The notes under the pieces are model-generated. The model made no database searches and was not told the origin of the DNA. It saw nothing but the letters and a program-made list of their open reading frames with translations. From Salpingoeca rosetta (Eukaryota; Protista; Choanoflagellata), in the NCBI GenBank assembly GCA_033442325.1, contig JAWQFM010000027.1:394557-402495 (forward strand): 7,939 nt of DNA, given 5' to 3'. Of this stretch, positions 488 through 2,215 are shown in pieces. A program made the position numbers and the translations under genes. How positions within the stretch are numbered: position 1 is the stretch's first letter; every line of letters begins with the position of its first letter.

Positions 488-1097
488 GTGCATGTGTGCG
501 TGTGTGTATGTGTACATGTGTGTGTGTGCGTGTGCGTGTGTGCGCGTGCGTGATGCGACCCACATCATACTTGCTTTGAGCTGCACCGTTCCCGGTCAGC
601 AGAGGTGCCCCCATACAATCACCAAACTACCACGCCTTAACCCTCCTTCCCACCACCACCACCATTACCACCGTACCATCACAGATGTTGCGGCGATGCT
701 GCGTGCCCGCCATGGCGACCACTACCTCGTCTTCAACGTCTCGGAGAAGGAGTACGACATTTCAAAACTCAACCACCAGGTTGGGCGACTTGCATGGTTG
801 CATTGCATCTTGCATGTACGCGCACCTATGCACGTGTGATGCATGCGCCCATGTGCCGTTGTGCCTGCTACATCGTGCGTGGCGTCAACCCTTCCTCACA
901 TCAATGCTGCCAATGTTGTCCTCCAACCACATCATCCCCAACCAAACCACCACCATCACCACCACGAAGGTGCTTGACTTTGGATGGCCGGATCACATGG
1001 CCCCGCCCCTCGAGCGTCTCTGCAGGTGAGACAAGAATGGTGATGACATTGCTCTGATGATAACAGTGATGAAGACAACGTTTGTATTTGTACGCAC

Positions 1098-1161
<64 letters not shown>

Positions 1162-2215
1162 GCAGCGTGATCACGTCGATGGGCTCGTGGCTGGACAGCG
1201 ACCCGTCCAACGTCGTGGTCGTGCACTGCAAAGGCGGCAAAGGGCGAACGGGCGTTGTCGTCGCCGCCTACTTCAGCTACATGCGCCTCTTCCCGAAGTA
1301 AGCACCAGGCTGCTGCGTTTTATTTTGTGTGTCTGTGTGTGTCTGTGTGTCTGTGTATATACCTGTGTGTGTCTTCGTCTGCATTACGCTGTCTATTTGT
1401 ATGACACCATGCTCCATCGTGCCATCATCGTCATCGCCATTTCCAATCATTCTTGTAAACATCATGTCTCGCGTGCATTGCAGGGCCGACGACGCCATGT
1501 TGCACTTTGCACTCAAGAGGTGCGCTTAATTGCCCGTTTCCACACTGCGTTGCCGCCGTCTCTCTTGTGAAGTCTGTTCAGCGCGTTCTTCACAACAGCC
1601 GCTGGCCTGTTTCCCTCCACATCACTGCTCACCTGACGACACAACACAATGCATCTCAACACACTTCAACACACTTCAACACACCGCGTGCAGGTTCAAC
1701 AATGCGGAGGAAGTTGGGGACGTTGGCGTGACGAATCCATCGCAGCGGCGATACGTCAACTATTTCCAGCACATCGTCACAGGCGCCCTGCAGGTGGACA
1801 CAAGTTCCGATTGTGTGTGCGTGTGCGTGTGGGTGTGCGAATTGGGTGCAAAGTACCGCTCGTCGTTGACCATTCTCCTTGCCGGCTTTGTGCACTCACT
1901 GACTCACTCACTGACTCGCTCACTGACTCACACACACACAAACACACACACGCACAATGATGCAAACGCGCAAACACTCCATGCACGACCGCCACCATCA
2001 TCGTCGTCATCAACATCAGGTGTGGCCGCGGCCACTGCGACTGCTGCACGTGATCATGCAGACTGTGCCGCACTTTGACAAGAACAAGGGCTGCCGACCC
2101 GTCCTCGCCATCTACGAGGTGTGTGTGTGTGTGTGTGTGTGTGTCTGTGTGTCTGTGTGTCTGTGTGTGTGTGTGTGTGTCTGTGTGTCTGTGCGTGCGT
2201 GTGTGTGTTTGTGTC

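What the first reader, a model, noticed from the sequence alone, without database searches (positions are those of the whole stretch)
970..1793. Tensin-like protein with an apparently intact active site and a VSP-type P-loop (HCKGGKGR): candidate SH2-targeted phosphoinositide 5-phosphatase built on the PTEN fold
Seen: the WPDH acid loop, a complete CX5R motif with both lysines (HCKGGKGR, 1224-1247) and a TI loop [11 protein letters not shown]. Established: PTEN is HCKAGKGR (a 3-phosphatase), voltage-sensing phosphatases such as Ci-VSP are HCKGGKGR (mainly 5-phosphatases), and PTEN A126G gains 5-phosphatase activity. Animal tensin-1 and tensin-2 have degenerate motifs. Inference: this is an active lipid phosphatase with a VSP-type Gly but a PTEN-like TI-loop Thr. 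It would be recruited by phosphotyrosine through its SH2, making it functionally analogous to SHIP but of unrelated fold.
Basis: partly seen in the sequence, partly recalled or inferred. Interest (0 to 1): 0.8.

Follow-up and report, generated by a model that had tools for sequence, protein, structure and literature searches.

The report
Choanoflagellate tensin with intact phosphatase site
This is the choanoflagellate version of the animal adhesion protein tensin. Its PTEN-like phosphatase site is fully intact, but that is the normal ancestral state of the family, and the proposed 5-phosphatase activity is untested.

Summary
The window carries a 12-exon gene on the + strand, with GT..AG at all 11 introns. 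It encodes a PTEN-type phosphatase domain, a PTEN C2 domain, a low-complexity linker of about 600 aa and a C-terminal SH2, with no PTB. WPDH lies at 985-996, HCKGGKGR at 1224-1247 and [11 protein letters not shown] at 1725-1757.

The nearest relative is a transcript-derived protein of the choanoflagellate Hartaetosiga gracilis (68-70% identical over PTP-C2, contiguous across every exon junction). In a tree the protein sits inside a well-supported clade of choanoflagellate plus animal tensins. PTEN-like and VSP-like proteins fall outside it.

The supposedly special "VSP-type" P-loop is not special. [10 protein letters not shown], together with WPDH and GVT(Q/N)PSQRRYV, is shared by the choanoflagellate, most sponge, placozoan, cnidarian and amphioxus tensins sampled. 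Molluscs keep the P-loop octet and WPD(H/N), with a changed TI loop. Only arthropod tensins and vertebrate TNS1 and TNS2 have decayed. The Gly at the PTEN-A126 position is present in every tensin row.

The protein is probably an active phosphoinositide phosphatase that the SH2 recruits to phosphotyrosine sites. D5 specificity is possible, because PTEN A126G gains it, but it is not shown.

It is a new member of a known kind, of moderate interest. Two other first-stage notes of this scan already concern this same gene.

The parts
94..212 (+). First visible exon (N-terminal helix and start of the PTP domain, ...[22 protein letters not shown]). Its 5' boundary is uncertain: acceptor AG at 143-144 (exon from 145) or AG at 92-93 (exon from 94). 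The gene continues upstream of the window.
   Evidence: Orthologues carry about 130 aa, including a C1 zinc finger, before this point. In-frame similarity to S. infusionum and C. flexa reaches back to about 86-94.
386..439 (+). Exon 2 ([18 protein letters not shown]).
685..779 (+). Exon 3 of the PTP domain.
970..1025 (+). Exon 4, with the WPD-type general-acid loop [10 protein letters not shown] (WPDH = 985-996).
1166..1297 (+). Exon 5, with the P-loop HCKGGKGR (1224-1247).
1484..1519 (+). Exon 6 ([12 protein letters not shown]).
1694..1793 (+). Exon 7, with the TI loop [11 protein letters not shown] (1725-1757).
2020..2118 (+). Exon 8, start of the PTEN-type C2 domain.
   Evidence: PF10409, E 1.2e-6, profile positions 3-33.
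2425..2532 (+). Exon 9, C2 domain.
2735..2858 (+). Exon 10, C2 domain.
   Evidence: PF10409, E 7.7e-6, profile positions 68-109.
3093..3163 (+). Exon 11, end of the C2 domain.
3478..5316 (+). First part of the last exon: a low-complexity, acidic and Ser/Thr/Gly-rich linker of about 610 aa.
   Evidence: no Pfam domain.
5317..5877 (+). SH2 domain. N-half at 5317-5403, with betaB5 Arg at 5395-5397. Lineage-specific insert of about 88-94 aa at 5404-5685 in the BC loop. C-half at 5686-5877.
   Evidence: PF00017, E 2.1e-9, two stretches; alignment with choanoflagellate and animal tensin SH2s.
5878..5961 (+). Short C-terminal tail and stop codon (5959-5961). No PTB domain follows.

Best explanation
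The window holds most of one gene of a craspedid choanoflagellate. The organism name is coded by the tools, and the nearest protein on record is from Hartaetosiga gracilis. The gene is the orthologue of animal tensin.

Shown: the architecture is a PTEN-type phosphatase domain packed against a PTEN-type C2, then a disordered linker of about 600 aa, then a C-terminal SH2, with no PTB. Also shown: every residue that PTEN uses for catalysis and for holding a phosphoinositide head group is present (Asp and His of the WPD loop; Cys, Lys, Lys and Arg of the P-loop; Thr and Gln of the TI loop). The same set is kept in the choanoflagellate, most sponge, placozoan, cnidarian and amphioxus tensins sampled (molluscs keep the P-loop and WPD loop). 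It is lost only in arthropods and in vertebrate TNS1 and TNS2.

Inferred from orthologues: an N-terminal C1 zinc finger is encoded upstream of the window.

Inferred from this long conservation: the domain is a working enzyme and not a pseudophosphatase. It most likely acts on PI(3,4,5)P3 at the membrane, where the C2 (and the C1) hold it, and the SH2 concentrates it at tyrosine-phosphorylated partners.

Not derivable from sequence: which phosphate is removed. The P-loop Gly makes D5 attack on PI(3,4,5)P3 possible, as in PTEN A126G. The PTEN-like Thr in the TI loop argues against a full VSP-like profile that includes PI(4,5)P2.
For: Gene model with 11 GT..AG introns and an open frame. Pfam hits: PTP P-loop families on exon 5, PTEN_C2 on exons 8 and 10, SH2 on the last exon. 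Best relative is the H. gracilis transcript-derived protein: 502 bits, 68-70% identity over 307-315 aligned positions, no gaps at exon junctions. Tree: tensin clade with SH-aLRT 99; window sister to H. gracilis (95); PTEN-like and VSP-like rows outside. Motif table across 57 sequences and Gly at the A126 position in all tensin rows. Choanoflagellate homologues are C1/PTP/C2/SH2 without PF08416, whereas the sponge Oscarella has the PTB. AF2 model of the orthologue's PTP-C2 (pLDDT 89.3, pTM 0.89) matches PTEN (TM 0.81-0.87) and Ci-VSP (TM about 0.84) over both domains. Expression and splicing pattern in RNA-like runs. PTEN A126G and TI->ET data.
Against: There is no biochemical datum for any non-vertebrate tensin, and an intact motif does not prove activity. 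The only tensin with reported activity (TNS2) is described mainly as a protein tyrosine phosphatase, although a review also reports evidence of PTEN-like lipid phosphatase activity for it. The residues preceding the TI loop are acidic here (EEVGD), whereas I recall PTEN as basic there; that PTEN sequence is from my memory and was not checked. The SH2 lacks the alphaA2 Arg and has a large BC-loop insert, so phosphotyrosine binding is not assured. The structure model is of the orthologue and not of this protein, because the spliced sequence has no reference. The 5' end of the gene is outside the window.
Confidence: 0.6

Rival explanations
1. One reading: the enzyme is chiefly a phosphoinositide 5-phosphatase. 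It would convert PI(3,4,5)P3 to PI(3,4)P2, and perhaps act on PI(4,5)P2, because of the VSP-type P-loop Gly. It would thus be a SHIP analogue on the PTEN fold.
For: The P-loop is identical to that of Ci-VSP. A126G alone gives PTEN D5 activity on PI(3,4,5)P3. An SH2 is present with the betaB5 Arg.
Against: The TI loop has Thr-Asn and not the VSP Glu-Thr pair. In PTEN, PI(4,5)P2 activity needed both changes, and VSP G->A mutants stayed D5 enzymes, so the Gly is neither the sole nor a necessary determinant. The Gly is universal in tensins and occurs in about half of the nearest PTEN-like representatives (53 HCKGGKGR against 55 HCKAGKGR). It therefore carries little specific information.
Confidence: 0.2
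2. A PTEN-like D3 phosphatase of PI(3,4,5)P3 and PI(3,4)P2. It would be recruited by the SH2, and the Gly would be tolerated in the tensin pocket.
For: The Thr of the TI loop, the Gln, both Lys and the Asp-His are PTEN-like. Sequence identity of the orthologue model to PTEN (32-34%) is slightly above that to Ci-VSP (27-30%). UniRef names the M. brevicollis orthologue a PI(3,4,5)P3 3-phosphatase, which is an automatic name.
Against: A126G shifts PTEN towards D5. No assay exists for this clade.
Confidence: 0.25
3. Mainly a protein tyrosine phosphatase that the SH2 brings to its substrates, as reported for vertebrate TNS2 acting on IRS-1 and nephrin.
For: TNS2 Cys231-dependent PTPase reports. Choanoflagellates have rich phosphotyrosine signalling.
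Against: The pocket keeps the lipid-specific basic residues (Lys, Lys, His) and the long TI loop of PTEN and VSP. TNS2 itself has a changed motif (HCKGNKGK), so it is a weak guide.
Confidence: 0.15
4. A non-catalytic scaffold. The intact site would bind phosphoinositide or phosphoprotein without turnover, as assumed for most animal tensins.
For: Tensins are treated as adaptors, and TNS1 and TNS2 are classed as pseudophosphatases by sequence. TNS2 C231S mice are reported normal.
Against: The full catalytic set, including the general acid, is conserved across choanoflagellates and early-branching animals. Lineages thought to be inactive have lost it.
Confidence: 0.15

Closest known systems
Choanoflagellate tensin-like proteins (H. 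gracilis EP00056_P010146; M. brevicollis MONBRDRAFT_12682; S. infusionum, C. flexa, S. urceolata, M. fluctuans and S. diplocostata transcripts)
   Same: Same clade. Same C1/PTP/C2/linker/SH2 plan without a PTB. Identical [10 protein letters not shown] and WPDH.
   Different: This copy has a much longer low-complexity linker than most of them. It also has an insert of about 88 aa in the SH2 BC loop that the others lack.
Animal tensins, especially vertebrate TNS2/C1-TEN (C1-PTP-C2-SH2-PTB)
   Same: Orthologous PTP-C2 (38-53% identity) and SH2. Orthologues share the N-terminal C1 with TNS2.
   Different: No PTB domain. The catalytic motif is intact, whereas vertebrate TNS1 is HNKGN.GR and TNS2 is HCKGNKGK.
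PTEN, and its A126G variant
   Same: PTP-C2 fold (TM 0.81-0.87 for the orthologue model). All catalytic and head-group residues are shared. TI loop of equal length, with Thr and Gln.
   Different: Gly in place of Ala126 and Asn in place of Ile168. It lies outside the PTEN-like group in the tree. It has an added linker and SH2.
Voltage-sensing phosphatases (Ci-VSP, TPTE2)
   Same: Identical P-loop [10 protein letters not shown]. Same fold (TM about 0.84).
   Different: No voltage sensor in the orthologues; they have a C1 instead. The TI loop is Thr-Asn and not Glu-Thr. The VSP-like representative falls outside the tensin clade.
SHIP1/2 (SH2-containing inositol 5-phosphatases)
   Same: Only the logic is shared: an SH2 joined to a phosphoinositide phosphatase.
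   Different: From general knowledge, SHIP has an unrelated catalytic fold (the endonuclease/exonuclease/phosphatase type). 5-phosphatase activity is not shown here.

Membership tests
Tensin family | PTEN-type PTP domain directly followed by a PTEN-type C2 | tested here: met
   Pfam hits on exons 5, 8 and 10. Full-length alignment to tensins. Orthologue model matches PTEN and VSP over both domains.
Tensin family | Groups with tensins and not with PTEN, VSP or other PTEN-like proteins in a tree | tested here: met
   Clade of 10 choanoflagellate-type plus 31 animal tensin rows, SH-aLRT 99. This was the quick search only, with no bootstrap.
Tensin family | C-terminal SH2 of the tensin type | tested here: met
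   PF00017, E 2.1e-9. Aligns with the choanoflagellate and animal tensin SH2s.
Tensin family | C-terminal PTB domain (PF08416) after the SH2 | tested here: not met
   The stop codon comes about 28 aa after the SH2. No Pfam or tblastn signal in 5900-7939. All choanoflagellate homologues also lack it.
Tensin family | Integrin or actin binding and adhesion-site localisation | not testable with these tools
   Needs cell biology.
PTEN | P-loop HCKAGKGR and a TI loop with Thr-Ile | tested here: not met
   HCKGGKGR and Thr-Asn.
PTEN | Placement with PTEN orthologues in a tree | tested here: not met
   The PTEN-like rows were used as outgroup, and the window lies in the tensin clade.
Voltage-sensing phosphatase (VSP/TPTE) | N-terminal four-helix voltage-sensor domain | tested here: inconclusive
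   The 5' end is outside the window. The orthologues have a C1 finger and no Ion_trans hit, whereas VSP-like P0146 has one.
Voltage-sensing phosphatase (VSP/TPTE) | P-loop Gly together with a Glu-Thr pair in the TI (gating) loop | tested here: not met
   The Gly is present, but the TI loop is Thr-Asn. The ET pair is defined.
Active Cys-based phosphatase (CX5R) | Catalytic Cys, Arg and general-acid Asp all present | tested here: met
   Activity itself was not tested.

The most novel reading that the evidence does not exclude
Tensin began as an enzyme. In this reading, the ancestral-type tensins that survive from choanoflagellates to amphioxus are active, SH2-recruited PI(3,4,5)P3 phosphatases with D5 (SHIP-like) output built on the PTEN fold. 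The vertebrate and arthropod tensins known as scaffolds would then be decayed descendants.
Probability: 0.2. Interest if true: 0.7.

Novelty: new member of a known kind. Interest (0 to 1): 0.4.

Why it matters
Tensins are studied as adhesion scaffolds whose phosphatase domain is regarded as dead or doubtful. This gene, and the comparison it prompted, shows that the complete PTEN-type catalytic set is the conserved state of the family outside vertebrates and arthropods. That makes the question of whether ancestral tensin was a phosphoinositide phosphatase aimed by an SH2 directly testable with one recombinant domain. If it is active, it would add a second route, besides PTEN and SHIP, by which phosphotyrosine signalling and PI3K lipids were coupled before animals arose. 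If it is inactive, it is one more orthologue of a known family.

Tried and rejected
1. I searched for the gene's own annotated protein using the last exon in two word searches (residues 560-827 and 737-827). Neither found anything, so the spliced protein has no reference. I did not type it into any tool. It could therefore not be folded or searched whole, and I used the 68-70% identical H. gracilis orthologue as a proxy.

No DNA of 430-523 was sent to any search tool afterwards. The local spliced protein model, used only in scripts, contains the three residues encoded by 430-439.

3. ATG at 116 as the start codon: rejected. Orthologues have about 130 more N-terminal residues, including a C1 finger.

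4. An apicomplexan or other protist origin, suggested by the low-complexity coding and the TG repeats: rejected by the protein phylogeny.

5. A PTB domain hidden downstream: none was found.

6. The top E-values of the 43-aa representative search (P0001, P0002, P0029) are ankyrin-repeat false positives.

7. Literature: I found no paper in the held library on the catalytic motif of non-vertebrate tensins. This shows nothing about journals that are not held.

Full report
**What is in the window**

The + strand carries a multi-exon gene whose introns are full of (TG)n/(CA)n microsatellites. I placed twelve exons by eye and checked them by script. All eleven introns are GT..AG, and the spliced frame is open to the stop at 5959-5961.

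The finding's span, 970-1793, runs from the start of exon 4 to the end of exon 7. The key motifs lie as follows:
- WPDH at 985-996
- HCKGGKGR at 1224-1247
- [11 protein letters not shown] at 1725-1757

The degenerate DNA pattern for the P-loop occurs once, against 0.00 expected in 200 shuffles. Pfam finds PTP-superfamily P-loop families on exon 5, PTEN_C2 on exons 8 and 10, and SH2 (E 2.1e-9, two stretches) on the last exon. Ci-VSP is [14 protein letters not shown] is HCKAGKGRTG, and the PTEN TI loop is KGVTIPSQRRYV.

**Is the exon model right?**

I could not lay reads. Two indirect lines support the model.

First, the spliced PTP-C2 aligns without any gap at an exon junction to a protein translated from a transcriptome of Hartaetosiga gracilis (P0006). 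The match is 502 bits and 68-70% identity.

Second, runs that the tool guesses to be RNA hold 0.24-0.26 of the sampled 31-mers of 970-1793. If only exons 4-7 are present, 204 of 794 words (0.257) are expected. DNA-like runs hold about 0.9. Over 100-5990 such runs hold 0.52-0.58, against 0.53 expected for exons only.

Two points stay open.
- The 5' edge of the first visible exon may be 145 (AG at 143-144) or 94 (AG at 92-93). In-frame similarity to the S. infusionum and C. flexa proteins reaches back to about 86-94.
- The in-frame ATG at 116 is unlikely to be the start, because all orthologues have about 130 more residues, including a C1 zinc finger. The gene is therefore cut by the window's left edge.

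**Whose gene, and which family?**

A search of 1.84 billion cluster representatives with the 43-aa exon 5 gave 1456 hits. I scored the best 150 locally with the spliced PTP-C2, and the long ones proved to be tensins. Cluster look-ups and a word search seeded with P0006 named them.
- Choanoflagellates: H. gracilis, Salpingoeca infusionum, Choanoeca flexa, S. urceolata, Mylnosiga fluctuans, Monosiga brevicollis MONBRDRAFT_12682 and Stephanoeca diplocostata.
- Sponges, Trichoplax, cnidarians, amphioxus, molluscs and arthropods.
- Vertebrate TNS1 and TNS2.

A maximum-likelihood tree of 55 PTP-C2 sequences was built (LG+C20+F+G4, quick search, SH-aLRT only). It gives a tensin clade with support 99, made of a choanoflagellate group (89) and an animal group (93). 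The window is sister to H. gracilis (95). PTEN-like rows, a VSP-like row (P0146, which has an Ion_trans hit) and amoebozoan PTEN-like proteins lie outside.

Identity of the window's PTP-C2 to other rows is as follows:

| Compared with | Identity |
|---|---|
| H. gracilis | 68% |
| Other choanoflagellates | 53-56% |
| Sponge, cnidarian, amphioxus tensins | 51-53% |
| Vertebrate TNS1 / TNS2 | 42% / 38% |
| PTEN-like row | 37% |
| VSP-like row | 38% |

The organism's name is coded by the run tool. It is a craspedid choanoflagellate with many public DNA and RNA studies. Other first-stage notes on this genome also guessed a choanoflagellate.

**Architecture**

Choanoflagellate homologues are (C1)-PTP-C2-linker-SH2 and never carry the tensin PTB (PF08416). 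The sponge Oscarella and other animals do carry it. In the window the reading frame stops about 28 residues after the SH2. Neither Pfam nor tblastn with seven tensin PTB regions finds anything in 5900-7939.

An AlphaFold2 model of the H. gracilis PTP-C2, built on a 41-sequence alignment, has pLDDT 89.3 and pTM 0.89. It matches PTEN (TM 0.81-0.87, 32-34% identity), Ci-VSP (TM about 0.84, 27-30% identity) and auxilin (0.75) over both domains. This is a proxy. The window's own spliced protein has no reference, and I did not type it.

**The central point: the motif is not special**

The table below lists the three catalytic loops across 57 sequences.

| Lineage | WPD loop | P-loop | TI loop |
|---|---|---|---|
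| Choanoflagellates (minor exceptions), most sponges, Trichoplax, cnidarians, amphioxus | FGWPDH.AP(P/S/T) | [10 protein letters not shown] | GVT(Q/N)PSQRRYV or close variants |
| Molluscs | WPD(H/N) kept | HCKGG(K/R)GR octet kept, but the following residues are IA or MA, not TG | GLPQPSQRRYV (the Thr is lost) |
| Arthropods | decayed | HSKGD.GR | - |
| Vertebrate TNS1 | - | HNKGN.GR | - |
| Vertebrate TNS2 | His after the Asp lost | HCKGNKGK | - |

The exceptions among the early lineages are small. One sponge (Oopsacas) and an unnamed relative have HCVGGKGR. M. brevicollis has TA in place of TG after the octet. Mylnosiga has WADH.

The residue at the PTEN-Ala126 position is Gly in 46 of 55 rows, including every tensin. 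Among the 150 nearest representatives, HCKGGKGR (53) is as common as HCKAGKGR (55), and it occurs in amoebozoan PTEN-like proteins that have no voltage sensor.

So the "VSP-type" P-loop is the ancestral tensin state and a common state of the whole PTEN-like superfamily. In addition, TNS2 has reported Cys231-dependent PTPase activity, and a review reports evidence of PTEN-like lipid phosphatase activity for it. By sequence, however, it is classed as a pseudophosphatase.

**What the conservation implies**

The general-acid Asp, the adjacent His, the Cys, both Lys, the Arg, and the TI-loop Thr and Gln are kept together over the whole choanoflagellate-to-chordate span. They are lost together in the lineages where tensin is regarded as a scaffold. 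I infer that the ancestral-type domain is catalytically active. The basic pocket residues and the long TI loop are those of lipid phosphatases, so a phosphoinositide is the likeliest substrate, most plausibly PI(3,4,5)P3. This is inference and has not been measured.

**D3 or D5?**

Leitner et al. 2018 (PMC6182344) report four relevant results.
- A126G alone confers D5 activity on PI(3,4,5)P3 to PTEN.
- TI167/168ET alone does the same.
- Both changes are needed for activity on PI(4,5)P2.
- The reciprocal changes in Ci-VSP and Hs-VSP1 lower activity but do not change the D5 preference.

The window protein has the Gly but a Thr-Asn TI loop. The closest experimental analogue is therefore PTEN A126G, which predicts some D5 activity on PI(3,4,5)P3 and none on PI(4,5)P2. 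The pocket differs elsewhere, however, and the Gly is not a sufficient predictor in VSPs.

**The SH2**

The SH2 aligns with those of the choanoflagellate homologues and, more distantly, with animal tensin SH2s. The invariant betaB5 Arg (FVVRQS, 5395-5397) is kept. The alphaA2 Arg of animal tensins is not kept in any of the four choanoflagellate SH2s aligned.

Between betaB and betaC there are about 88 extra Gly/Ser/Asn-rich residues (5404-5685) that no homologue has. Inside this insert there are in-frame GT..AG pairs. The donors at 5449 and 5464 have the hexamers GTTGGT and GTTGGG. These are the same hexamers as the donors of exons 10 and 3. The acceptor at 5643 follows a pyrimidine-rich tract.

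Part of the insert could therefore be an unrecognised intron of 180-195 bases. The word shares of RNA-like runs (0.52-0.58 observed; 0.53 expected with the insert and 0.49 without it) lean weakly towards retention. This is unresolved. Phosphotyrosine targeting is plausible but not assured.

**Novelty and score**

The family, its presence in choanoflagellates and the domain plan are all visible in public databases. I found no paper in the held library that discusses the intact catalytic site of non-vertebrate tensins, but many relevant journals are not held.

I file this as a new member of a known kind. Its value is as a clean test case for whether tensin was ancestrally an enzyme. Interest is 0.4.

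Two other first-stage notes concern this same gene: the PTP-C2-linker-SH2 architecture without a PTB, and the split SH2. My results agree with both.

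Noticed in passing
window 5404-5685 (candidate intron 5449 or 5464 to 5643): The insert of about 88 aa in the SH2 BC loop contains in-frame GT..AG pairs. Their donor hexamers (GTTGGT, GTTGGG) equal those of two other introns of this gene, and the acceptor is pyrimidine-rich. Part of the 'insert' may be an unannotated intron of 180-195 nt.
   Followed up: partly
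window 86-145: The frame of exon 1 stays open upstream, and the translation (CPSY..SRR..) resembles the end of the C1 finger and the basic helix of the S. infusionum and C. flexa orthologues. The exon may begin at 94 and not at 145. The C1 domain and start codon lie beyond the window.
   Followed up: partly
window 27-66, 440-560, 1098-1160, 2119-2280, 2900-3013, 3190-3300, 6540-6730, 7500-7690: Long (TG)n/(CA)n microsatellites sit in nearly every intron and in the intergenic DNA. One of them (430-523) tripped the read tool's filter.
   Followed up: no
window 3326-3378: The 12-base unit GCCAATGTGACT is repeated about five times in tandem in intron 11.
   Followed up: no
window 3700-3790 and 4340-4385: The coding sequence contains microsatellite-like runs: a (GAG)n run that gives about 20 Glu, and a CA-rich run read as His/Thr/Arg repeats ([15 protein letters not shown]).
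   Followed up: no
window 7110-7755, minus strand: A second gene converges on the tensin gene's 3' end. It has an ORF from ATG 7382 to a GTGAGT donor near 7113 (acidic and Lys/Asn-rich, no Pfam hit) and a short upstream exon at about 7696-7751 encoding a hydrophobic segment.
   Followed up: partly
window 6125-6190: Tandem TGCTTGA/TGCTTGC units lie in the presumed 3' UTR.
   Followed up: no
P0005, P0004, P0007, P0013 (representative search): These proteins of 688-890 aa carry two complete PTEN-like PTP-C2 modules in tandem, both with HCKAGKGR. Their source is unknown.
   Followed up: partly
P0006 (H. gracilis orthologue) residues about 990-1100: The closest orthologue's SH2 region falls below Pfam detection. 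Its betaB motif reads FIVILLPRQ, so the SH2 may be decaying in that lineage.
   Followed up: partly
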